Positions 17,819-64,000 of a stretch of DNA of 64,000 nucleotides are shown piece after piece (within the stretch, counting starts at the first letter, position 1; every line of letters begins with the position of its first letter). Source of the stretch: Geosiphon pyriformis uo1 (taxonomy: Eukaryota; Fungi; Glomeromycota). Position numbers and translations under genes: made by a program. The stretch is taken from NCBI GenBank assembly GCA_016748015.1, contig JAAOMT010000299.1:1101924-1165923 (forward strand), in the 5' to 3' direction. The notes under the pieces were generated by a model that was given only the letters and a program-made list of their open reading frames with translations, was not told the origin of the DNA and did not search any database.

Positions 17819-17879
17819 NNNNNNNNNNNNNNNNNNNNNNNNNNNNNNNNNNNNNNNNNNNNNNNNNNNNNNNNNNNNN
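17819..17879. other. Assembly gap (61 N) between poly-A and poly-T runs
   Basis: Run of N. Confidence 0.99.
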
Positions 17880-22406: not shown

Positions 22407-23119
22407 TTAAACCAGTCGAGCAATGGACATCTTTACACGAATTCGTACGCGTTCGTCCATGTTATACCAAAAATTTTTCACCATTAACGCACTTCGGCCA
22501 GGAAGATTACTTGCAATTAAAGTCCAGCTCGGGCCGTAACGATGGTACATTGTGATAATTGCACGTTTTTCGTTTAAACTAAATGGTTGCTTCTTAACTT
22601 TTAATTGAAAATTAGGAAGGTTATTTAGATGAAGAAGAAAATTTTTGAAATCAAATTTTTTAATATATAATCTTTCGTGATTGACTTACTATTTGGACGA
22701 AGGTGAGACATCCATCTAAAGAAGAAATTGAAAAAATAAAATAAAAAAAAATTAATTCACGTTATTAAAATAAAAAAAATATAGGATCATTATTTTCATT
22801 ATTTTCATTAAAATATCCAAACGAAACGAAACGAAACGAAATTAAATTTTAATATTATTTACTTGTCTCGACATTGCTTAGGATTCCTCGTATCAAAACG
22901 ACGAGCTAGTTCAGCCCACTGGTGTGGAAATTCGTCATATAGCTCATAAAGTCTTGAAATTTCCTAAAAAAAAAAAAAAAAAAAATTCCAAAAAGATTGA
23001 ATGATTAAGTTTTTCATCCAAGCTTTAAAAAAAAGAATATTTCAAAACTATATTGTTTTATAATTTACCTGATCAGACCATGCACCTTGAGTTGTGCCTG
23101 TGTTAGTGATCACGACCAT
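22407..23119 (-). CDS. Small two-repeat (R2R3-type) MYB/SANT transcription factor, 122 aa, 4 exons (23119-23069, 22963-22863, 22715-22690, 22597-22407)
   Basis: Three GT-AG introns (105, 147, 92 nt) with consistent phases give MVVITNTGTTQGAWSDQEISRLYELYDEFPHQWAELARRFDTRNPKQCRDKWMSHLRPNIKKQPFSLNEKRAIITMYHRYGPSWTLIASNLPGRSALMVKNFWYNMDERVRIRVKMSIARLV. Classic MYB motifs: GxW, W..LA, R..KQCR.KW..HLRP.IKK.PF, W..IA..LPGRS...VKNFW. Confidence 0.93.
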
Positions 23120-24060: not shown

Positions 24061-26503
24061 TTAGTCATTGTTGATTTTATCGGAATTTCCAATACGATTG
24101 ATGACCATGTAGTGGCATTTGTTGCGGGTACCCTAAAAAAAAAGTTTACATTGGCTGTTTCCAAAGAAAAAGTTTATAGCTTCGGTTTGTTTATTTTCAT
24201 GGCTTAATGTGATATATTAATTTCTTTGAATTATTGAAATAAAGTAAGTAAATAATGAATGAATGAATGAATGAATGAATGAATGAATTAATAAATAAAT
24301 AAATAAATTAATTAATAAATGATCATATATTAAAATTGTTGTTAACCTTTTAATTTTTATTAATATATATATTTTTTTTTGTAAAGAGTATTTTATTAAT
24401 GCATTATTCTATGCTCTATGCAGGTAATATATTAAATCAGGAATTTCAATTTATTCGAATTTTAAATTTATTACATACAAAGAGTTAGGGGATACAAAAT
24501 TAGCCATTTTTTTTATTTTATTTTTTTGATAATCCTGATCAATGTTCTCTCCAGTTTTTTCTCTTATATGTGTACAAAAAGTCAAACCAATAATCACTAA
24601 ATTTTATAATGGCACATGATGCCACAAGACTAACACGCACGCCGAAAATGGGAGACCAATTTATTGTGCGCGAATCAAAATCTTTTGTCAAACGATGAAA
24701 GATTTTTTTTAACGATGCTTACAATGGGATTGCGAAACTTTTCACAATTGATGTGAATTTGTGTGTACATTATTGAAAGATTTACAAAAGTTTGTTAAAA
24801 AAAATAAAAATAAAAAAATAAAAAAAAATGGATTATCATTTAAGTTTAATCAAGTTATTATTCGAATTCTTGTCGAAACCAGGATATTAAAATTTTGTGA
24901 TATTTTTCCTCAGGTATTGGGAGATGTAATGCATCAATAAATTTCGAAACTATAATTAGTTTTTCAATATTTAAAGTAACTTGATCCCACGTTTTTTTTT
25001 TTTTTTTTTTTTTTTTGAACTATATACTAATTTTTTTGACAAGTTTCCATGTACCAAAAAAAAAAAATTGCGTTACAAAGATTTTAGATGGTTTTTCTGC
25101 AGTGATATTTCACAAAGTACAAAAGTACCAATTTGGATCAAACATTTTTTAAAGATTGATTTCGAATCTCGAGAAAAAAAAACCTCTCCCCCCCCCCCCC
25201 ATTTTCAAGTCATCCCTGAAAAATTAAAATGAACAGGTTTTTTATTGTTTTATAATTTTGTTCCCAAGTTTTACTTGAATGGGCTAAAAAAAATTATCAA
25301 TGTGAAACTATCTAAAACTTTTACAGGAACAATAGAATGGAATTCAAAATTTTTTCCTTAGGAGAATCGCCTGGAAAGAATAAAATTTTTTAGAAAAAAT
25401 TTTTCAAATTAGATTGAATAATATTAAATTTTTTTTTTCTTCAATGAACTCAATTTAATTTATTTATTTTTCTTCAATGAACTTAATTTAATTTTTTCAT
25501 TTACATTATAAAAAACTTTTAACGTGATTTTCTTAATTTTATTCAAGGTAACTAACCAAAAGATATATTATATGTATTTTATTACTTATATCTTAAACAA
25601 TAAAATTATTCTATTTGTTATTGAAAGAAAGAAATAACCCTTAAATTTATGAAATCTGTTTGACAAAATAATTTTGTTTTTTTCAAAATATTCAAAAAAA
25701 AATAAAGCTTTCAAAAATTTCTTAATTTTTACCATTTATTAAAAATTAACTATTTATTATAAAAACTTTTTCATGTAATAGTTAATGTCAAATTTAATTT
25801 ATTTCTTTATTTTTTGTTTCAAAATTGGGTTATTTCTATTCGCTCATAAAATAAAATAAAAAAATTCTTTTCATTTTAAATGTATAAAAATAAAATCTGA
25901 ATGTTCAATTCATTATTATGTAATACATTGTTAAAATAGAAAAAGTTTTAAAATCTTTTCAATATTCATACTTAATTTCGAAAAACATATTAATAATAAT
26001 AATAATAATCTCGTAATATTGAATTCTGATTCTTTTCAAAAAATTAATTTTATTCTTTTATATTCTATGAAAAAATTTTTACATGCAATTTTGATTTTTA
26101 GAAAAAAATTAATCAAAAAATTTTTTTTTTAATTGAAATAAAATTTGACAAATAAAAAATTTTTATAAAAATCAGATTTATTCATATATTTAATTCTGAT
26201 TTAAAGTTTTGAAAAATGTTAAAAAAATTGAAATAGAAAATTTTACAAAGAAATTCAAGATTTTCCTTTCTATCAACAAGATCCTTGGCAACAAAGTTAT
26301 CAAATATGGGACTATAGGACAATTGGAAGGCATTTAGTTGAATGTGAATATTCAGAAAGCCTTCCAAGAGCAACACCGATGCTTTGCCAAAGTCCATAAA
26401 CTAGCATGTGTAGAGAGGGCCTAAAAACATTTGAATCACACGGTGTTTACAGATGAAACAGCTTTTCAGCTGTTACAAAATATAAAGAAATGGATGCCCA
26501 AAA

Positions 26504-26629
26504 ATTAGAGCAAATTATCGTGAAGGAGTGGCATGATATTCCCCGATCTATTCTAATCAGGTTAGCGGGATCAATGAAGTCGCGTTGTGAACTAATTATA
26601 GAAGGAAATGGTAATCGAATTTCCTTATA
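26504..26629 (+). mobile_element. Tc1/mariner transposase C-terminal fragment
   Basis: LEQIIVKEWHDIPRSILIRLAGSMKSRCELIIEGNGNRISL* fits the Tc1 C-terminal pattern and resembles the end of the 42661-43932 transposase. Confidence 0.75.
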
Positions 26630-26726
26630 AAAAAGATTTAGTTTTTTAGCTTTAATTTAATTTGTTAGTGTTTTTGATGTAAATTATGTTTTCTTATCAA
26701 GTTTTGATTTTTGGATCTAAACTTTT

Positions 26727-26979
26727 GGTTTCCAAAAAGTTTTTAATGAAAATATAGACTTTAAAGACGAATTAAGTGATGGTATTAAAGAAGTTAGTCA
26801 GGGTGTTTGGGGAGCTACCAAAAAATTTGGGCAAGTTCGCTATCAAAACAGAAACAGTGGTGGGAACGGGAGCAGCAATCGTTTCCATGGGGGTTTAAGC
26901 TGTTGCTTACCATGGTTCCCATAAAGAAAGAGGAAGGAGTTATGATAGTGAGTGCCCTATTTGTCGAGGAGATATCTAA
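26727..26979 (+). pseudogene. Bacterial-type Gly/Ala-rich small protein ending in a CxxC motif (frameshifted)
   Basis: GFQKVFNENIDFKDELSDGIKEVSQGVWGATKK / LGKFAIKTETVVGTGAAIVSMGV*AVAYHGSHKERGRSYDSECPICRGDI*; intronless. Confidence 0.4.
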
Positions 26980-27179
26980 AAAAAATTTTATGGCAAATAA
27001 ACAACCACTTCTTTTATTTCTTCACTCGAGTCAGTCTTATGTATTATCCACATTTTTTTTTCATTATAAACTTTTTCTTTTTTGATTTCTCTTATACTCT
27101 TTCTTATCTTATATTTTTTGGCCTTCTCTAATTATTCACATTGTTTGTAAAATAATTAGGAAAAGAAAGAATTAGTTAT

Positions 27180-27600
27180 TTATCAGCAAAAAAATCTTTG
27201 TCGGACATACTTATTAAATGTCTTCCACTTACTAGCAATAAACACCCCATAAAACTGCTTACTTAGGCATTTAAAGTATAATATCATTTAGGCACTCTCC
27301 ACCCCCCCCCCAAAAAAAAAAAACTGAGATTATTTTGATTTTTGATCTGACCAGTCTTCCCAGCTTCTTTTAGTTCTTGACCATAGAGATAACAAGCACA
27401 CAGGTCATAAGAATGATTAGGCTTAACTGGTCTTTTCTGGTGATCTGGTTGTGGGAATCTTTTTTGATATGACTAACAACCTCATATATACAAGCAGACT
27501 TTGTAACAGAATTCTCAACAAACTAGATACTCCGCTTCATGCAAGCAACAGAAAAACTTACCAAATGGCTTTAAGTTATTATTGGTGACATAGTATTTTT
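27180..27600 (-). pseudogene. Bacterial-type Cys-motif hypothetical protein (decayed)
   Basis: KPNHSYDLCACYLYGQELKEAGKTGQIKNQNNLSF / WGVESA*MILYFKCLSKQFYGVFIASKWKTFNKYVRQRF, joined across an expanded poly-T/poly-G run at ~27302-27322. Confidence 0.45.
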
Positions 27601-27627
27601 ATTGCAAATTTTAATCGTTTTCTCTCT

Positions 27628-27924
27628 ATTGTCTTCACCTTTGAAAAAGCTACCACTGGGGTCTAAAAGGGTAAAAGGTTAAGAAAAGAAATGCACAATT
27701 GTAAAAGAGAATTAACCAAAAGGAGTAGACCAATCTTAGCCTTACAGAAACTTATTTTACTTGAACAAAGCCAAAAAATTTAAGAGAATTAAACCAATTA
27801 CTCGGCAATCGTTTAGAAAATTAAAAAAGGGCCGAAATAATTTATGGTATCATAATTAACGACTAATATCGTATTATTTTTGATTAAATAGGTACTAATG
27901 CTTACAATGTATTAGATAAAAGTT
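27628..27924 (+). pseudogene. higB: HigB-like (RelE/ParE superfamily) toxin, frameshifted
   Basis: IVFTFEKATTGV*KGKRLRK...LALQKLILLEQ / KNLRELNQLLGNRLEN*KRAEIIYGIIIND*YRIIF* / GTNAYNVLD aligns by eye with the HigB pattern ...ARRKLxxLxxAxxLxDL...PGNRLEKLKG...YSIRINDQWRIxF...GxAYxV. Confidence 0.8.
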
Positions 27925-28229
27925 ATGGTAAGGAATCAAAAAAACCAAAAAACAAGAGAAAAAGATAGAATTAAAGCTTATTTACCCAGGGAAAATGTTA
28001 AGGGAAGAATTATTAATACTCTTAAAGATATCAGTCGACCAATTTACCAAAAGTATTCAGATAAAGAAGAAATAATTAAGGAAATATTAGCGGAAAAGCA
28101 AGATATTAGTTCTAATATTGATTGAGTTTGCAAAAGGGTTATAAATTAGATTGCTGAAAAGATAAAGAAGAGGAAAAAAAAATTAGCAAAAATTTAAGGC
28201 TTTTTTCACAAACAAGAAAAAGACTATGA
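27925..28229 (+). pseudogene. higA: HigA-like HTH (XRE) antitoxin, frameshifted with an internal deletion
   Basis: Immediately downstream of higB. ELKLIYPGKMLREELLILLKISVDQFTKSIQI / EEIIKEILAEKQDISSNI / *LSLQKGYKLD parallels HigA PIHPGEILxEEFLxPLxISxxxLAxxIxV...IxEIxxxKRxIT...WLNLQxxYxL. Confidence 0.8.
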
Positions 28230-28337
28230 ATGAAATGGTGAATAACAAGCTTTTTTCCACTATATAAAAATTTTAAAAACATCCTAATCAGTTCTTTGTC
28301 TTTGATTACTATAAAAAATTCGCTTGGTTCCTCTTCG

Positions 28338-28550
28338 CTAAATGGTTATTTCTTTGGCATTGCTATCTGAACAAAAAGATTTGGTCTGTTTTCCCCTTTT
28401 AGCTTTTTCGCGTTTTTTGGCTAATTTTTTTGCATACATATCCAAGGCTCTTTCTAAAATCTCAACTGCAAAACATTGTTCTTTCCAGACTAACTTTTTA
28501 TAAAACTCAGGCTTTACCCGCAGTCCTAGAGGCTTAGTTATTTCTTTTTT
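28338..28550 (-). pseudogene. Ribbon-helix-helix (CopG/ParG-like) DNA-binding protein, 5' end frameshifted
   Basis: KKEITKPLGLRVKPEFYKKLVWKEQCFAVEILERALDMYAKK: alternating beta strand (LGLRV), then P-E helix A and helix B (VEILERALDMY). Confidence 0.55.
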
Positions 28551-29497
28551 CTAGCATAAATTTAGATTTCAATTATTTTTAATTTTATAGTTTTTCTATC
28601 TGCTAGCAAAAATTATTTATTAGGCGTTCTGTGGGAAAAAATAAATCAAAAAGGAGAGGTTTTTGGATAAAAAGTAAGAGTTAAAAAGGAAAATTAATTG
28701 TAGTGTTAAAAACAGTTAATCAGTATTAAGTGTGTGTGCGAAAACTAAATTTTTAGTCTAATTTATTTGGTGTGAGAAATACATTATCAAACAAAATTTT
28801 TGGTAAAAAACAAATTGAAAAAAAAATTTTACATTTTAAATATTAATGGACTATTCTAAACAAAATGAGTTGAATATTAACAGAATTTTTAAAAATATTT
28901 AATTTTTCAAGATTTAAAATAATAATTGAGTTGTGATAGCTAGAATGTAATTTAGAAATTTATTTATTTTTTTTCAATAATAAAAAATAATTTACTAATT
29001 TTTAATAATATCTAATACGAGATATAATTTTCCAATTTTAATTCTTTATAATTTTATTTGATGATTTCAAAAATTTCAAAGAATTAAAATTTGCATTTTG
29101 TCAATTTTTGGGTATTAAATCTGACTTAAAGCCATTAAATAATTTCTATATTATATTTTTTTAGTATAAGTTAATTATTTATGAATTTAAAATACAAAGA
29201 CTTATTTAAATCAAGATAATATTTATGATCAAATTGATTGACTGATTAATAATCAAAAAAAAATCATAATTTCTGATTAAAATCGTGTAAAAAGTTTTAA
29301 ATCTGTTGATTTGTTTAATCTATTAAAATGAAAAAATAATAATTTTATTTTTTATAAATTTTTTCATTTACATTTTAAATTTATTTATTATATTATTAAA
29401 TGAATATTTATAATTTTGGGTTTTGTTGGTGTAATCTCCACGAAAATTTTTTTTTCAATTAAAAACACAATTTCATTAAAATAAATTTTATTTTTAA

Positions 29498-30648: not shown

Positions 30649-31858
30649 ATGAGTAACATATCTTCACCCACACCGTTCGTGGCTGAACATACTGGTGAAA
30701 TAATGATGAAGACACTGGAGGTTCGTCGTAAAATTTTTAAAATAATTTCAAGCTTTAATAAAATTTTGCAAATCCCCTAAAAAATTAAATTAAATCATTT
30801 TCAATTAATTTTAATTTTTAATTATTCAATTTCTTAATATTTTTCTAATTGCTTTGTTATTGAATGACCAATCATAGGTTATTCAGGCCTACAAAGAAGC
30901 CGGTCAAAAATTACGGAAAGTTCAGCAGATTGTAAACGAATTGCGAGCCATCCTTCCACCTGATAGGTGTCTCAGATTCCCACCAGGGGTACTTGAAAGC
31001 CTATCCACATTCCCAATTGAATCCATGGTCAATTTCCCTCTCAATGCAAATATATCATTACCACCTTTTTTTTCACAAATTCCCCAAGAATCGATTGACA
31101 AAACAGAAAAATCTGGTATAGATGAAAAACAAAAATTAGGTTTTAATCGGCAGCAAGAATTCGAAAAGTCTCCAAAGGATGAAGAAACTGAAGAGGATGA
31201 GCTTTTTCCACCTCCAATATCACGTGACCAAACGCCTGAACCATCGAGACCTATTAATATGATTGCAAAAAAGAAAAATATTCGCCATGAACCATACGAA
31301 AAACCACGATATTCAACCACTGAAGAAAATTCAGAAACTTCCGATGAATTCACGGTTACCAAAATCTCAACAACTGAAAGAAAAGCCCCAACTCTTCCAA
31401 ATGAAGCCACCCTAAGAATGAAATCCAAATTCCTTGGAAATATCTCCCTTAAAACAAATTTTCATCATCTTAGAAGTACTACTCCACGCTCAGAAAGGAA
31501 GGTTACCACCACGAGAGATTATTCACCACCAAAAAGTCCATCATCACCTTCACCTACAAAATTTCGATTTTCAGAATCATCTAATACAAAAATTTATAGT
31601 GCTGAACAAAAAATGCTCGTTGATGAATTTATCAAATATTTGACCCCTCGTCTCTCTACCACATCACAAAAAGCAATCGCTGAGGAAATTCGTCAAATTT
31701 CAGGAAACACTACAAGAATTGCTCAAGGAACGATCTCAAAGATGATTCGACGTGTTGAGATACCCCGGGACAACAATACGGTTGACGCCATTCGCAAATG
31801 GATTATTATCGAACAGTCCAAACCTGGATGTCCTGGAATTAAGGAAGAGGCAGATTAA
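30649..31858 (+). CDS. 350-aa putative nuclear protein with a C-terminal lambda-repressor-like HTH; 2 exons (30649-30720, 30878-31858)
   Basis: ATG 30649, donor GTTCGT at 30721 and acceptor TAG at 30877 join in phase 0 to ORF 30941-31858. The middle is P/S/E-rich and disordered, with a PY-NLS-like KKKNIRHEPY. The C-terminal SQKAIAEEIRQISGNTTRIAQGTISKMIR resembles an XRE/POU-type HTH. Confidence 0.75.
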
Positions 31859-54800: not shown

Positions 54801-57539
54801 ATACCATCAATATGGTTTGTCTTTACAATAATATTATTATTGGAAAAGCAAATGCTTGACATTAATTGTTTGCTAATTTGCAAATTTATAGATTTATAAC
54901 AACATTAAAGTATTATTAATGATGCTTGACTTTTATGATATAATTTGTGATATAATGCTTTAAATTAAGTGTAGGTATAATTTCTTAATATATTTAAATA
55001 TTTTTTTTAGATGCATATAAATTATTCAAAATTGATTACTATTCTTTACCAAAAGACTAATTAGATATGCTTAAATTTGTGTACATGTATAAGGTAGTTA
55101 TAAAGTAGATAGTAAGTATATAATTTTATATATTTATTGCTAAATAATAATATTTGCATCAATCTAATTACAAAATATTTTGCTAACAGTTATATGTCTG
55201 CTTAACAAAAGCTGGTTTGATTGCAAATAGAAAAAAGAGGCATATTATACATTACTCTAAAGTGCAAATTACTAAAAAATTGGCACAAATTAGAGAGTCA
55301 GAAATTTGGCTTAATAATTAACTTAATAAACATTTTAGTATTCTATTGTAAAATAAGTGTGTTTATTTTGAAAATTTTTCTTTAAACTCTATTATTTAGA
55401 TATTAAATTTTTTAAAAAATAAAATATTTCCACATTAACATCAATATTCAAGCACAAAGTGACAAATCTATTTTAGTCCTCCTTTTTTTTGTTTTCTTAT
55501 TTCTATTAAGCCTATCAAAAGACCCTTTAATTTCAGTTATTTCAAATCCTACTGTCATTACAAATAAGAGTAGTGGGAATGAAAATGGGTTTGGCAATAG
55601 AAATGTTGGAAGTGACATTGGAAACAATAATGATAGTAAGATTAGAAATAATAATAATGATAAAGTTTGAAGCAAAAATAATAATACAATTGGGAATAAC
55701 AATCATAATAAAATTGACAAAAAGCACTAAGAAACTATCATTCACACTAAGTAGTGTTTAATCTAAAATATACCTATACAATCTTCTTCAATTACTTATT
55801 TCATGTCAAATCACCTTTTTTCTTAATTAAACTCTTTACTGTTTAAGAAATAAAATTATATTTGAGTCTGGAATTAGAAGATTTTTTTTAGTCAGTGATG
55901 AATATCATGTTAATTAAATAGATTAAAAAAAAATACATAACATTATTTTATAAAATAGAATTAATTTTTAATATTTATTTAAAAAAAAATTTCAATAAAA
56001 ATTTACAGGCATTTGTATTATTTTATTTATTTTGCCAAAAGGCTTTTAATTTTGACAATATAGAACATAGTATGATCAATTGTTGTCACTAGTGGTTATA
56101 ACTGAGAGTTTTATAATTTATTAAATTTGAAAAACTTCTAATTTTTCATTATCTTTTTAGATAACACTAAATTTTAAAAGAATAGCATCATCATCATAAT
56201 TTTTGGTTATTCTGTTTAATCATCTCTAAACTATTTGCATATCTTTTAAAAACAAAAGAAAAAAAAGGTTTCAATGTTTTTTTTTTTCATTAAAATTTTA
56301 TGTTTTCTTGTTTAAATAAATAACAATCTTCAAATTGTTAAAAGAAACAGAACTTAAAAGGGAATCTGATTAGAAAAAGAAAGATTAAGATTTGAATCTT
56401 ATTTAGAAAAATGGTTATTATATTTCAACTAATAAAAAAAATTTGTACACTATTATTTACTCACACAAAGTTATTTTCATAAATAGTATTAATTAGTTTA
56501 GATCTTCTGACATCTCTTTTTTTAACAATAGCCCATAAGTTTTTAGTTGAATTTAAGTTAAGTAAATTGGCAAGCTAATCAATAACATTGTGAATATTTC
56601 TAGCAATAAATGCCTAAACAATTTTACATTTGTGCTTTGAATTATTATCTTACTGAAACCATCATTTACATTCTAGTATTTTTTTTAATTTTAGAGAAAT
56701 AAATGTGAAAAATTTCAATGTAAAATTTACTATTTATTATACTAGTAAATAAAATAAATTAGGTTTTTTTCCTCTATAAAAATTACCAAACAAAATTTTT
56801 TTTTCAGTCTTTTGATAATTACAAACTTTTATACCAATGTTTTAATGTGTTCTTAAATAAACAAAATACTGTTTTATTTGTAAATACAGCTCAGTTTTTA
56901 TTGTTATTTAAACATTAGTAAGTCTATTCTATACAGTTTTTTTTTATGCTTATTTGTAAGTATCAGTATTGCTAAAAAAAAGTTTTTTTAATATCTAAAA
57001 AATTTTAAATATCTTTTTGTTGTTTTGTAAAATATATTTATATTAGTTTTTGACAAATTTGTTGTCAAAGTTTTTGTTTTCTGTTGTTTTCTGTTGTATT
57101 TTACTTGTATTTTATATGCTCTTATTTCAGAAATATAAGACAATTTATTGCTGCATTTTTTGTTTAAATAGAAGCAACATTGCTCTTCTGGGCTGGCTTC
57201 TTTACCAGCAGTATACATATATGGTTAGGGTGGCTGGAACCTTTAACATCATAAAGAATTTTTCCTAATAACATCACTCTTTTAGGCCAGCTTTCCTAAT
57301 CAGCAATATACTTATATTGTAGTATTTGCTGTAAAATTATCACTAGATATAGGTTATAAAAAAGACTAAATATAAAATGTACTAACTTGTGGTAAAACTT
57401 CCAACACTCTCATTTTTATTCAAAATCAGTTATTTTTGTTAATAAGAAATTTATTGCACATTTTGCTAGGTTTTTAATAAGAAGTAGTGGTTGTAAAGCT
57501 GTTTCTTTTCTTTTCAGATAAATGACAATAGCAGAACAT

Positions 57540-58299: not shown

Positions 58300-61200
58300 C
58301 TAACCACAATGAGAGCAAAAGATAATTTTAAAGAAATTGCTTTTTCTTTTCCCTCTTTCCTCAATTCCTGTTAACTATTTCTTTTAACTTATCCTTATTT
58401 GTTGTGATGGAACTGGTGGGCTCGTCTGCTGATAGTTCTGGTTTGGGTTCGGCTGGTTTGGACCTGCCAGAGTGCTAAAAACAAGCGTGTTAATACAGTC
58501 TATTCCTATGGTGTATTTTACAAGAAGTCTAAGAAGCCTGCAGTTGGCATTTTGGTTGAGTTGTCCACTGATCCTCTATGTTTGGAAGATTTGGGTGGTG
58601 ACAATGGTAAGCTGGTCGCATCCTGGGGAAGCAGAGTAGATAGCATTTCTGGCAGTATAAGTGGTCTTTCGGATGTCAAGAATTTGGAGAACATGGTTGC
58701 TGAGAAGACAAGCTACATTGATTCAGATGAGGACAATGAAATGAACAAAATTATGCTGCGAAGAACTTGCACTTGGACGTATATGTTGGAACAACCTCTT
58801 AAGGCACTTCTATTTGCTACTATGAATGACAATGACGACAATTCTGTGTTGCCGCCTCCTAAAATCAGTAAGTCTAATCAGCTGCCTTCTTCTAAATCAT
58901 ATGTTCTAAAGAGTCATAGTTTCAGGCCAATGAAATTGTTTGCTCTAGATGTAAATTTGTCAGCTGTTCCTGGCAAAACTAATAGTGATAAGCTCATTTT
59001 AATCAAAAAAATTTTTTACAAAATTGATGGTTTTGGGGGAGCTTCAACTCCCTTAAAATTTCTTGGTATTATTTATTCAACTTTCACAAATGAGTCTAGT
59101 TTGATTAAGGCAGGGAAATGGCAGTTCATGAGAAAATTGTTGTCAATGGTGATTTTAAAAAAGCAAACATTCATTCGAATCGGGAAGTGATCATTAAGAA
59201 GATCCCAGTTGATCTTTCAAAGTTGGCTGTAAAATCTGTTTTTTCTAAATTTGGCAAGATTGTTTTCATTAGAATGCAATTGATTGGTCTTTGGCAAAAG
59301 GCCCTGATTGAATTTGAGTCATCAGAAATTGCCAGTTTGGTTGCTTCTAAGTGGTCTGTTCTTGTGGGAAAAAATTTGGTTTGTGTAGTACTGGCTGTCA
59401 ATAATAAACAAATATGGATGTCAAGAGATTGTCATCAGGCTTTGCTCTATACTCTTCCAGTTAGTACTTCAGCCCATGATCTGTCAGAATTGTTGGTATC
59501 ATATGGTGGGAGAACTTGTTTCATTGGCTGCAATCCTGGTTCATATGTCCGCGATTGGTGTACAATCATTTGTTTTGAGAATGAGAATGCCAAATTGGCT
59601 GCTGTTAGTACCGTTCTAATTTTCAAGGGTGTTAGTTTGCATTGAACTAGTCTTGTTTTGGCTAGCTGTACCAAGTGTGAACAGTTTGGTCATATTACTA
59701 CCAGCTGTCCTGTGGGTGGAAGTTCTGGTGTTTATGGGAAGAGGATAGTTTCTGATCAGGATCAGGTTTGTTTAGCTAGTATATATAAGAAAAAGTCGGC
59801 TCTTATTGCTCGTCCAGTTTTGTTTGGTGGCAAAACATGGACCCAAGTTGCTAGTGGCATCTCTTTTCATATGTCTCCTTCTGGTTCTCTTGGGTCTGGT
59901 TTGTGTGCTGGTTTGGTTCTCCCTTCAGCAGTCTCTGATTATCTTGTTGTTTTCCATTTGAATGATTATTTGGCGGTTTTGGAACACTCTTTGGAGCTTC
60001 TGGCTGACCATGTTTCTGGCATCCTGGTCAAGTTGGATTCCTTTGGTGTGATTCCTTTGGTTCTTTCTTCCCTGGCCACCTCTTTTGTTATTTCTGCAGC
60101 TTTGAGTTTTGAAGTGAATTCAGATATAATTGTGGACAATGCTTTGAGTTCTTTTGATATTACTTCTCCTGTCACTATTGATGCTGTTGTCGACCTCAGC
60201 ACTAGTAGTTCCAAGGTTCTTACTGCCAAAGTGGGTGGTTTGGAGACGAAATTGGTCACTTTGGAGGCTTTGGTTGGTTCAGTTTTAGATAAGTTGAATC
60301 TTCTGTGGTCTGGTTCAGGTCTGTTAGCTCTTATGTCATCTTAATGACTCACTTTATTTGGAAGATTGCCACATGCAATGTCAGAGGTATGAACATTTGT
60401 GTGAAGCAGACAGACATTGTTTATTGGCATAAAGGCATGAACAATATGGTTTCTATTGTCACTGAAACAAAGTTGAAGGGAAAGATTTGCCCTTGGATCA
60501 CTAATAAATTTGATGGTGTTCGTGTTTTTACTTCTGGACTGGATTCTGGTCACATGGAATTTGGTGTTGCAATCATTTTGAACTCTTTTTTGATAAGACA
60601 TGTGTGTAAAGTTTCAGAGGTGTCTGGTCGGCTTCTGTTGGTTAGATTGCTTTTTAAGAAGAAACTCTCTGTGTTTATTCTGGGGCTGTATGCTGGTGCG
60701 TCTTCAGCAGTTCGTTTTTCTCAGGCTGGCAAGGTTAACTCTCTTATTGCTAAGGCTGTGAATGAGTCCTTTTTTGTTGTTTTTGGTGGTGATTTTAATG
60801 AGAATGGTTCTCACAAGTGTGCAAGTTTCAAAAAATGTTTTAAGTTGGGTTTGATTAACTCTCTGGAAGGAAGCTCTTTCGTAAAGTCACCCACTTGGTG
60901 CAATTCTTGTGGCATCACTAAAATGATTAACTATGTGCTTATTTCTTCTAATTTGGTTGGTGCGGTGGTGGATTGTGGTGTGGATGGTGTTGAAAACTAT
61001 TTTAATACTAATTACAAGGCTGTGTTTGTGTCAATGGGACTAGGAGGCCTGCTTAATGTCAAGTTGAAATTACTGCACAAACAAGCAAATAAAGATTATT
61101 GGAAGTATGATATCAAAAATACCAATGAGATTAAGTGGTCTGAGTTCAGGGATGCTATGGCTGCTAATGCTGTTATGTTCTCGGATAAGTTTGTTGCAGC

Positions 61201-64000
61201 TAAGCAGTTTTCTAATTTGGATGCGATGTAGAACATTGTTTGTAAGATTATAGTTCTTTCAGCTAGTGGAACGTTCAAGAAAAAGTGGTTTAAGAGTTTT
61301 GATTGTGTTTTTAATAAGATGTCTTCCCAGTTTCATAAACTGGAGCTACTAGTGTCTAAACTGGTGAAGGCTTCTTAGTTGGTTTCTGGTGGAGATTTTG
61401 CTTTGTTGTTGGATACTTGGAACAGGCTTGATTCTGTGGGCACTTTGCTGATGAGATCTCTGTTTCTTTTTGGCTCTAGTTTTAATGTGATCCATTCAGG
61501 GCTGGCTAAGATGAACAAGTCTTACCGCTCTTTTAAGTTGTTGGAATCTAAGCATGCTGAAAAATTTCATATGAGACAAGCTATTGAGAGGAGGATAGAA
61601 AGTTTTAAGATGGATAAAAGTCATATCATTAGGAGTGTTTTGGAGCATTCTTTTCATAAAGTGGTGTTGAATCATTTGGTGGATGATAGGGAGTTGGTCT
61701 TGGAGCCTGAGTTGGTTAAATCTAAGATGGATGGAATCATGGAGGGTTGGACCAGGAAGCATGTAGTGGCTTCTGATATCTCTAATAATTGGGCGAGGCA
61801 ATTTCAGTCTTTGAATTATGTCTTCGATAGTGCCTTCTCTAATGTGATGTATTCAATTGGTTTTAATGAAATATTTGATGTTATTTCAAATTTGCCTGAT
61901 GGGAAAGCAGCTGGTCTTTCTAGTATTACTAATAAACTTTAGAAACACTGTGACAAGTCAGTCTTGGATATGCTTTTGGTGCTTTTAAATTTTTGTTTGG
62001 GTTGTGAATCAGTGCCTAGACCTTGGAGAGAAGCCTAGGTCTTGATGATTCCTAAACCTTAAGAGTGAGAAGGGGTTCTTACTAATACCTGCCCTATTGC
62101 TTTGATTGAGACAGCTTGCAAAATTCTTTCTAAGATTCTTTCAGATCGGATCTTTCTGGCTTGTAGCACTTTTAATGTCCTCCATGGGGACAATTTCTCT
62201 GTCCTGAAAGGTATGTCTACTTAATCACCTATTTTCGCTATTGGTTCAGTGATCAAAGATGCTTTGGAAAAAAACTGAGAGTTGTGACTGGTTTTATAAG
62301 ATATATACAAAGCTTATAATTCTGTTGGTTGGGAGCATCTTGAGAAGAGTTTGGTTAGGATCAAAATGTGTGACAAATTTATCAGATTTTTTGGTAGTAT
62401 TCATAATGGTTGCACTGACAGATTTTGGTTTGACTGATGAATATCATGTTCACAATGGATTGGATCAGGGGGAGGTTTTTTTGCCACTTTTCTGACACAT
62501 ATTTTATGACTCATTTTTGTGTAAAATTAAGAGACAGGAGAGCATTTGTGGTTACAGGTTGATTTCTCATTTTGTTTCTAAAACTAGCCAGATGGAATCT
62601 CAAGCTGAACTGACATCATTTCTGGCCACCGGTGCTTTTGTTGATGATACTATCTGGGTCAGTAGCAGCCAGACTGCTACACAACATATTCTCAATGTTG
62701 TTAGTGATTTCTTTCATTTAAATGACATTTCGATAAATAATGACAAGACTGTGGTTATTTTTTTCAACTGTCAGGTTGCTGCTTCTTATCTAACTATCAG
62801 TGGTATGCCAATTTCCATTACTAAAAGAGGTGAATCTCATCATTATCTAGGGATTTTTTTTATCTTCTGAAGGTCTTTTGAAGCCCAACTTGGTTAAGGT
62901 GCATTCAGATGTTCGGTTTTTTGTCAATTGCATTCTAAAAAAAGTTATTTCAGATAAACAGTTTGCTTATTTGGTGTCTTCAGTTCTCTTTTCTATCATC
63001 AGCTACAGAACTCAGTTCAGTTTTATTCCTTTCAGTGTGTGTAATAAGTGGAACGCTTTGATTCGCAAGGGCCTGAAGTCCAAATCTGGGCTGCCTCTGG
63101 ACTTTTCCAATGATACGCTTTATCATCCTTCCTTGTACAATTTAAAAACTTTTGAGCAGATTCAGGCTAAGAGCAAGTCAGCTTCTGTTATTGCTTTTGC
63201 AAATTCGGTTAGTATTTCAGGTCACTTGTTTTCTCATAGGTCTCACAATCTCCAGGTTCTTAGCTGGTGTCCTCATCACTCTTTGTTGTTTCCTGTTCGT
63301 GTTAGAATTAGCCCTTCAAACAACTTTTTGGCAGGTGTAGTTCATATTTTTTCTGGGTGTAATTTGTCTTTGGGTGGCTTTCTGGCCAGTGTTTTTCATC
63401 TTCAGAGCAGTATTTCTATGTCTCTAGTTCTTGGCAAGACAATTTTCTTCAAATGTGTCTCTTCCCTTAAGCATTATGATATTGCTTTTGTAGAACAGCT
63501 TTGTAACTGGAATGGCATTGTTTTTGATTGGAAGACTTTCAAGCATTGGAAAAGACTAGACTCCCATGGCCCAGTCTCCTTCTGGTTTGATCTCTGTTTG
63601 TTTTCTTGGTGGTGTAGCTTCTCCTTCTAGTCGTTCTCTTTATGAGGGTGTTTGTGGCTCTTCTGACATCTATCAGTCTCTTGGTTTTGGTGTTGTTTGT
63701 AATAATCTGTTGAATGTTGGTGCCGCCCACCTCTCTGTGTACACAGATAGATCTTTGAGTAACTTGGGCAGTGTTGACATGTTGGCTGGTCCTATGGTTT
63801 TCTTTAAAAACATTGATTCAGGTCTGGATGTGGGGGTTTCTGGTTTGGTTTTTTCTACTTTGGCAGAGTTGCAGGCCATTGCTTTAGCTCTTGAGTGTGT
63901 TTCTTCTTTTCATTTGGTTGACTTGTTTTCGGACAGCCAGGTGGCTATAGATGCTTACAGGTTGGAGTTTTTATCAGCTGGCCCTGATTTCAGGAATTGT
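58300..64000 (+). mobile_element. Degenerate non-LTR retrotransposon (LINE) with ORF1 and APE-RT-RNase H ORF2, truncated by the window end
   Basis: ORF1 from ATG 58407, with an RRM-like region and zinc knuckle CTKCEQFGHITTSC. ORF2: APE motifs ATCNVRG, TETKL, GGDFNE; RT motifs PIALIET, LDQGEV, FVDDT; RNase H motifs VYTDRSL, AELQAIALAL, SDSQ. Many stops and frameshifts; 5' boundary approximate. Confidence 0.93.

What the first reader, a model, noticed from the sequence alone, without database searches (positions are those of the whole stretch)
26720..28780. ~2 kb endosymbiont-derived (MRE-like) island: probable bacterium-to-fungus transfer of a plasmid-like cassette
Seen: five tightly packed, intronless, decayed ORFs on both strands (Gly-rich CxxC ORF, Cys-motif ORF, higB, higA, RHH gene). 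They sit between a Tc1 fragment and AT-rich fungal spacer, and between two spliced fungal genes (MYB, HTH). Established: Glomeromycotina host Mollicutes-related endobacteria, and TA plus RHH genes are typical plasmid or mobile-element maintenance cargo. Inference: the Lys/Glu-rich style and motifs such as KNxNNxxFWG recall MRE hypothetical proteins from memory. The stops and homopolymer slips argue for real nuclear residence rather than contamination, since live symbiont DNA should be intact.
Basis: partly seen in the sequence, partly recalled or inferred. Interest (0 to 1): 0.85.

Follow-up and report, generated by a model that had tools for sequence, protein, structure and literature searches.

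The report
Dead endobacterial gene island in fungus
About 2 kb of DNA from the mycoplasma-like bacteria that live inside mycorrhiza-type fungi, including a broken toxin-antitoxin pair, sits as a decayed fossil between two genes in a Geosiphon pyriformis chromosome, which is a real but already known kind of symbiont-to-host DNA transfer.

Summary
Observation confirmed. The host is Geosiphon pyriformis (the flanking gene is 100% identical to G9A89_020456). Five broken bacterial genes lie at 26745-28550: an ORF with an MRE-type C-terminal His/Cys motif, a Cys-rich ORF (45% to an MRE-like soil-metagenome homolog; found only in two MRE genomes among 401 of their order), higB, higA and an RHH-like ParA-partner gene. 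Nothing else in the 64 kb window matches MRE proteins. Three TGA codons fall on tryptophans of homologs, so the donor used the Mollicutes code. The island is single-copy, on a gap-free stretch of a 1.19 Mb scaffold, and may split the 3' end of a host Tc1 remnant. Eight TAA/TAG stops and six frameshifts in four genes suggest about 0.1 substitutions per site of neutral decay. 'Plasmid-like cassette' is overstated: no rep, ParA or recombinase is present and no syntenic donor cassette was found; these are modules of MRE accessory islands. MRE-to-fungus transfer is published for Diversispora, and this scan has noted similar dead inserts elsewhere in this genome. A new member of a known kind.

The parts
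22410..22963 (-). Host spliced MYB gene (last two exons), left neighbour
   Evidence: Pfam Myb_DNA-binding E 1.3e-10 and 1.7e-5, searched exon by exon
26319..26669 (+). Host Tc1/mariner transposase remnant (internally deleted), 3' part up to the point where its match to sister copies stops
   Evidence: 13 other matches in the genome; sister L012 is DDE_3 and reads in the standard code; match ends at 26669
26745..26979 (+). ORF1 pseudogene: Gly-rich stretch ending in the C-terminal His/Cys motif of an MRE hypothetical family; TAA at 26896 and at least one frame change
   Evidence: E 1.2e-5 in G004. N-terminal part unsupported
26980..27191 (.). Unassigned island sequence, no homolog found
   Evidence: blastn and blastx blank
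27192..27664 (-). MRE Cys-rich hypothetical gene (about 157 aa family), pseudogene: 6 TAA/TAG stops, one frameshift at the C/A homopolymer run near 27300-27328; TGA at 27517 and 27484 fall on Trp of homologs
   Evidence: 45% over 148 aa; E 9e-21; DhMRE and G004 homologs; 2 of 401 genomes of the order; codons
27703..27926 (+). higB (bacterial RelE-family toxin) pseudogene: about 3 frameshifts and 2 TAA stops
27938..28226 (+). higA antitoxin pseudogene: 2 frameshifts and an internal deletion of about 14 codons; TGA at 28119 on the conserved Trp
   Evidence: 7 of 7 MRE-like homologs scored use TGA there
28278..28550 (-). RHH-like gene of the MRE ParA-partner family, pseudogene: no in-frame start, N-terminal part missing, 3-codon deletion, decayed C-terminal extension; no ParA upstream
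28551..29122 (.). Unassigned: purine-rich stretch to about 28780, then AT-rich (14% GC) sequence; the right boundary of the foreign DNA lies somewhere here
   Evidence: composition; 28693-28747 has one 85% match on another contig
29123..29170 (+). Possible displaced 3' end of the Tc1 remnant (18-mer core at 29130, 2 edits)
   Evidence: only such hit in the window on either strand, 0/300 shuffles of the flank; background 3 hits in 1.1 Mb of MRE DNA; noticed by eye; nhmmer E only 1.5
30649..31858 (+). Host gene G9A89_020456 (two exons, 350 aa), right neighbour
   Evidence: residues 215-305 of the exon-2 ORF are 100% identical to the Geosiphon pyriformis protein; predicted exons 30649-30720 and 30878-31858 add up to 350 codons plus stop (sequence)

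Best explanation
A fragment of about 2 kb from an accessory (mobile-element) island of a Mollicutes-related endobacterium (MRE, Ca. Moeniiplasma) was captured by accident into a Geosiphon pyriformis chromosome, most likely during repair of a DNA break at or inside a Tc1 remnant in the spacer between a MYB gene and G9A89_020456. It works like a NUMT or a Wolbachia nuclear insert. It was probably dead on arrival: TGA reads as stop in the fungal cytosol and the genes have no eukaryotic expression signals. It has since decayed neutrally and does nothing today. Shown: MRE homology, donor code, single copy, fungal flanks, lesions. Inferred: nuclear residence (no reads seen), break-repair route, neutrality, insertion into the Tc1 end.
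For: Homologs of all five ORFs in MRE genomes or code-4 MRE-like contigs. Cys family in 2 of 401 genomes of the order, both MRE; RHH family in 4 of 401, three of them in the MRE family. RHH piece scores 108-111 against the nearest MRE-type copies and 45-64 against proteobacterial ones and sits in a 97/100 set with MRE-like rows. TGA on homolog Trp at three sites; TAA, one change from TGA, at the higB Trp where 5 of 5 homologs use TGA. Single copy. No N gap from 17880 to 64000. Flanked by host genes and a host Tc1. Eight TAA/TAG stops in about 350 aligned codons fit about 0.1 substitutions per site, range roughly 0.05-0.2. CpG o/e 0.49, at or below which lie only about 2% of MRE tiles. 4-mer context score +36, against 86 +/- 36 for held-out MRE tiles and mostly negative host tiles. 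The assembly has no phage-integrase match, although such genes are abundant in MRE, so it holds no sizeable live MRE DNA. A second, diverged decayed island on C717 points to recurrent events.
Against: The Geosiphon MRE genome was not available and the closest DNA is only 68-73% identical. MRE genomes carry many pseudogenes (PMC4916391), and MRE contamination of Mucoromycota assemblies is common (PMC11423566, PMC10507103). The AU test on the short RHH alignment does not reject grouping with proteobacterial homologs (p 0.26). The composition signal is weak: a host exon tile scores +9. No microhomology or target-site duplication could be defined. The split-Tc1 motif is post hoc.
Confidence: 0.76

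Rival explanations
1. The DNA came in on a vehicle: as cargo of the Tc1 element whose end it may split, on one of the code-4 transposons that earlier scan notes describe in this genome, or as an excised XerC-type MRE element that integrated actively.
For: Apparent position inside a Tc1 3' end. All genes belong to MRE mobile-island families that lie beside Xer and ParA genes. Earlier notes on code-4 transposons (not tested here).
Against: Single copy. No transposase, recombinase or terminal repeats in the island. The Tc1 copy is internally deleted, and its sister copies read in the standard code and carry no such cargo at their 3' end.
Confidence: 0.12
2. Assembly chimera: a pseudogene-rich piece of the living symbiont's chromosome was joined into a fungal scaffold.
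For: Geosiphon hosts an MRE population (PMC13315312). MRE sequence in fungal assemblies is documented (PMC11423566). 21-30% of MRE ORFs are putative pseudogenes (PMC4916391). No reads were checked.
Against: It needs two mis-joins 2 kb apart in unique, gap-free sequence. All five genes are broken, several many times, whereas 16/18 higB and 22/24 higA copies in MRE-like DNA are whole. CpG and 4-mer profiles are shifted from MRE. No integrase match anywhere in the assembly. Host Tc1 sequence may continue on both sides.
Confidence: 0.07
3. The donor was another bacterium or plasmid (a proteobacterial plasmid, Nostoc, a soil bacterium), not MRE.
For: HigBA is widespread. The RHH family has distant members on proteobacterial plasmids and contigs. 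AU test not significant.
Against: The Cys-rich and ORF1 families were found only in MRE or MRE-like DNA. TGA falls on Trp. Scores are far higher to MRE-type copies. No DNA-level plasmid match beyond 43 bp.
Confidence: 0.03
4. The island is domesticated and functional (a protein, an RNA or a regulatory element).
For: It lies 1.9 kb upstream of an annotated host gene. The RHH piece is 70 codons without a stop.
Against: No intact gene in either code, no in-frame start for the RHH core, and lesions fit neutral decay. Expression was not tested.
Confidence: 0.02

Closest known systems
MRE-to-host gene transfer in Diversispora epigaea (Sun et al. 2019, as summarised in PMC8227670; the paper itself was not held)
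   Same: Same direction, same donor group, Glomeromycotina host.
   Different: There the reported genes are RNase III, Uma2 and HNH endonucleases and a methyltransferase, suggested to aid the symbiosis. Here it is a multi-gene block that is entirely dead and invisible to searches of annotated proteins.
NUMTs and Wolbachia-type nuclear inserts (own knowledge)
   Same: Endosymbiont DNA captured in host chromosomes with gene spacing kept, mostly non-functional and decaying, often near repeats.
   Different: Donor is a fungal Mollicute with UGA=Trp; the piece is small and old enough to be only about 70% identical to available relatives.
MRE accessory islands (ParA + RHH partner, XerC/D, HigBA, MazEF, Cys-rich ORFs), e.g. 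L046, L025, L098, DhMRE contig 3
   Same: Same gene families, tight packing and code; higB before higA; Cys ORF and RHH gene are frequent neighbours (17 of 85 RHH loci).
   Different: No ParA or Xer in the island, and a gene order not matched by any locus examined.
HigBA type II toxin-antitoxin system (PF05015, TIGR02607)
   Same: Toxin gene upstream of antitoxin gene, same strand, adjacent; both homologous to MRE HigB and HigA.
   Different: Both genes are broken and below the curated cut-offs; a fossil, not a working module.

Membership tests
Nuclear insertion of MRE DNA | Genes homologous to, and closest to, MRE genes | tested here: met
   the RHH tree agrees but its AU test is not significant
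Nuclear insertion of MRE DNA | Donor genetic code UGA=Trp | tested here: met
   TGA at 27517, 27484 and 28119 on homolog Trp; homologs mostly use TGA there. TGG-to-TGA mutation is not excluded site by site.
Nuclear insertion of MRE DNA | Contiguous with host nuclear genes in the assembly | tested here: met
   MYB, Tc1 and G9A89_020456 on a gap-free stretch of a 1.19 Mb scaffold
Nuclear insertion of MRE DNA | Physical linkage shown by reads, nuclear coverage or PCR | not testable with these tools
Nuclear insertion of MRE DNA | Empty orthologous site in another isolate or species | not testable with these tools
   the genome has no relatives in the collection; a possible split Tc1 end is an indirect substitute
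Plasmid cassette | Replication, partition ATPase, relaxase or recombinase gene | tested here: not met
   ParA and Xer HMMs give nothing in the window; plasmid DNA search blank apart from 43 bp; rep and relaxase not searched by family, but no unassigned stretch exceeds about 230 bp of island-like sequence
Plasmid cassette | Intact syntenic cassette in a donor replicon | tested here: not met
   not found in G004, most of G001 or about 85 MRE-like loci; the Geosiphon MRE genome was not available
HigBA toxin-antitoxin | RelE-like toxin gene followed by an HTH antitoxin gene | tested here: met
   order and homology
HigBA toxin-antitoxin | Intact frames above family cut-offs | tested here: not met
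Transposon cargo (Tc1 or code-4 element) | Multiple copies between element ends with target-site duplication | tested here: not met
   single copy, no terminal repeats

The most novel reading that the evidence does not exclude
MRE accessory islands are a preferred source of DNA reaching the fungal nucleus, for example as excised Xer-type circles, and host transposon sites are their landing places. This island, nested in a Tc1 end, and the diverged sister island on C717 would then be the first relatively datable records of a recurring symbiont-to-nucleus route that gene-based transfer screens miss.
Probability: 0.2. Interest if true: 0.65.

Novelty: new member of a known kind. Interest (0 to 1): 0.36.

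Why it matters
It adds a well-supported case that MRE DNA reaches Glomeromycotina nuclei as raw, non-adaptive multi-gene pieces, the raw material behind the few retained transfers already published. Such fossils are missed by screens of annotated proteins and may be dismissed as contamination. A genome-wide census could give the rate, source bias and relative age of transfer, and could record past symbiont strains. The single locus has no evident function, so its own importance is modest.

Tried and rejected
Pfam on ten window pieces: nothing meaningful. PF05015 over the own genome: no candidate. First homolog search with the single RHH piece: blank; the HMMER search of representatives gave the seed, and its other hit, a repetitive Closterium protein, was set aside as chance. 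Viral contigs: three blank scans. First genome and metagenome scans with the 3-row alignment: blank. ESM Atlas: no usable hit for ORF1, only an unnamed cluster at 0.90 for the Cys family. No terminal repeats or target-site duplication. Malar 2021, Sorwar 2024, Sun 2019, Torres-Cortes 2015 and the Naito mobile-element paper were not held, so I cannot say whether this locus is mentioned there. No structure prediction was run, as it would not bear on the verdict.

Full report
Host and context. The window is G000:C722:1101924-1165923 of a 128.3 Mb, 792-contig assembly. The ORF at 30941-31858 is 100% identical over the searched part to Geosiphon pyriformis G9A89_020456, 350 aa, on a 1,191,207 bp contig. 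Exons predicted at 30649-30720 and 30878-31858 add up to exactly 350 codons. The published assembly is 129 Mb in 795 scaffolds (PMC9453076). A spliced MYB gene lies on the left. The only N run in the window is 17819-17879, so MYB gene, island and G9A89_020456 are on one gap-free stretch. Geosiphon carries an MRE population of about 721 kb (PMC13315312).

The five genes. Pfam does not recognise the pieces. The RHH-like piece found a soil-metagenome relative at 56%, on a contig that reads in code 4 between what I read as a ParA end and a tyrosine recombinase. A profile then gave 141 proteins. The named ones are from RvMRE, GvMRE, Ca. Moeniiplasma glomeromycotorum, other Mollicutes bins, and short contigs of mycorrhizal fungal assemblies. 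Loci fetched with that family held homologs of the other genes: a Cys-rich ORF in L098, DhMRE and G004, and a tandem higB-higA in L046. G004 is a 615,212 bp MRE-family chromosome, the same length as the contig of the 'mread185' protein. Frameshift-aware alignments gave 45% over 148 aa (Cys ORF), 48% over 73 (HigB), 41% over 87 (HigA), 58% over 38 (RHH core) and 57% over 21 (ORF1 C-terminal motif), all above 20 shuffles each. Family HMMs confirm the first four. ORF1 is supported only at its C-terminal motif. As a control, no other part of the 64 kb window matched the MRE-like ORF set at E<0.01.

Donor. The Cys family was found in 2 of 401 genomes of the MRE order, both MRE; the RHH family in 4 of 401. 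Distant RHH relatives exist in Proteobacteria but score about half as well as the nearest MRE-type copies. The tree places the window copy with MRE-like rows (97/100), though on 80 columns, with a long branch, and the AU test does not reject the alternative (p 0.26). TGA codons at 27517, 27484 and 28119 fall on Trp in homologs; all seven MRE-like higA homologs scored use TGA at the third site. The higB Trp, TGA in 5 of 5 homologs, reads TAA here. In MRE, 71-86% of Trp codons are TGA. The donor was thus almost surely an MRE. The exact strain is unknown; the best DNA identity is 68-73%.

Not a plasmid cassette as such. In MRE the RHH gene usually follows ParA (42 of 92 copies), and these families mix with Xer, MazEF and HigBA genes in variable order on chromosomes and small contigs. 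The island has no ParA or Xer, and no locus examined has its gene order. It is best called a piece of an MRE accessory island.

Decay. The Cys ORF has six TAA/TAG stops and one frameshift at a C/A run. higB has two stops and about three frameshifts. higA has two frameshifts and a deletion of about 14 codons. The RHH gene lacks an in-frame start and its N-terminal part. ORF1 has a stop and a frame change. A rough neutral simulation gives eight stops at about 0.1 substitutions per site, with 0.05-0.2 compatible. CpG o/e is 0.49 against 0.82-0.92 for MRE genomes, although one MRE-like locus, L098, is at 0.55. A 4-mer context model scores the island between MRE and host. MRE do hold 21-30% putative pseudogenes (PMC4916391), so decay alone is not proof. 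But 16/18 higB, 22/24 higA and 14/22 Cys-family copies in MRE-like DNA carry at least 80% of the core in one frame (overlapping loci counted more than once), and five of five broken genes is far from that.

Insertion site. The island is single-copy. It abuts a host Tc1 remnant whose sisters are standard-code DDE_3 transposases. The match to sister 3' ends stops at 26669. The next 18-base core of those ends recurs, with two edits, once in the whole window: at 29130, on the same strand. The background is three hits in 1.1 Mb of MRE DNA and none in 52 kb of host loci outside true Tc1 ends. This suggests an insertion of about 2.45 kb inside the Tc1 end, including about 340 bp of unexplained AT-rich DNA. 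I found it by eye and a profile search gave only E 1.5, so it is suggestive, not shown.

Nuclear or chimeric. MRE sequence in Mucoromycota assemblies is a documented artefact (PMC11423566; PMC10507103). Against it here: two joins in unique gap-free sequence would be needed, the decay exceeds that of MRE copies, and the assembly has no phage-integrase match although one MRE chromosome has more than a dozen such ORFs. I put nuclear residence of MRE-derived DNA at about 0.9.

How it works. Most likely symbiont DNA entered the nucleus and was patched into a break at a dead transposon (inference from NUMT biology). TGA would end the Cys ORF and higA early in the fungal code and no eukaryotic signals are present, so the block was inert from the start and has drifted since. 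The route is inferred; carriage by an element is a minor rival because the island is single-copy and has no ends or transposase.

Recurrence and novelty. A second decayed island on C717 has Cys-family and RHH-family genes only about 70% identical to these, so it is probably a separate event; fainter remnants lie on C376 and C4. Earlier scan notes report other dead MRE pieces and code-4 transposons in this genome; I checked only the host name. MRE-to-fungus transfer is published for Diversispora epigaea (via PMC8227670). The primary Geosiphon papers could not be read, so prior mention of this locus is unknown. Verdict: real, probably nuclear, dead; a new member of a known kind; interest 0.36.

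Noticed in passing
L022:250-2200 (G000:C717, about 466750-468700): Second decayed MRE-like island: Cys-family ORF (+, i-E 5.7e-7), RHH-family ORF (+, i-E 7e-6) and a Gly/Ala-rich membrane-like ORF (-); only 70% identical over 102 bp to the window island.
   Followed up: partly
G000:C376:164891-164992 (-) and L023:1520-1640 (G000:C4, about 106821-106943): Short remnants of the Cys family (53% over 34 aa, one TGA) and of the RHH family (in 18% GC sequence); possibly older inserts.
   Followed up: no
G000:C788:343986-344291 (+): CbiA/ParA-family match with 1 TGA and 3 TAA inside; could be another MRE remnant or a spliced host gene.
   Followed up: no
window 28693-28747: 55 bp with one 85% match in AT-rich DNA on C575 (L002:1501-1553); nature unknown; lies at the island's right edge.
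   Followed up: partly
window 58552-64000 (+): G/T-rich block (36-41% GC) with ORFs that look like a decayed LINE: an ORF1-like part and an endonuclease-like ORF at 60305-61231; not searched.
   Followed up: no
window 56409-56443 (-): Weak match (E 0.002, strong composition bias) to the Tc1 3'-end profile; perhaps another remnant.
   Followed up: no
L025:953-6814: A Ca. Moeniiplasma chromosome region with a 1261-aa HNH/RuvC_III protein, Cas1 and Cas2 (type II CRISPR-like) directly beside a PemK, methylase, ParA, RHH and integrase island.
   Followed up: no
P0027, P0066, P0074: MRE RHH-family proteins annotated as fungal genes on short contigs (3-9 kb) of Racocetra, Gigaspora and Funneliformis assemblies; probably symbiont contamination.
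   Followed up: no
L027-L031: The MRE ParA-partner family has relatives in Acidithiobacillus and Ferrovum contigs that branch next to one MRE subfamily (84/99), hinting at exchange of this module between MRE and Proteobacteria.
   Followed up: no
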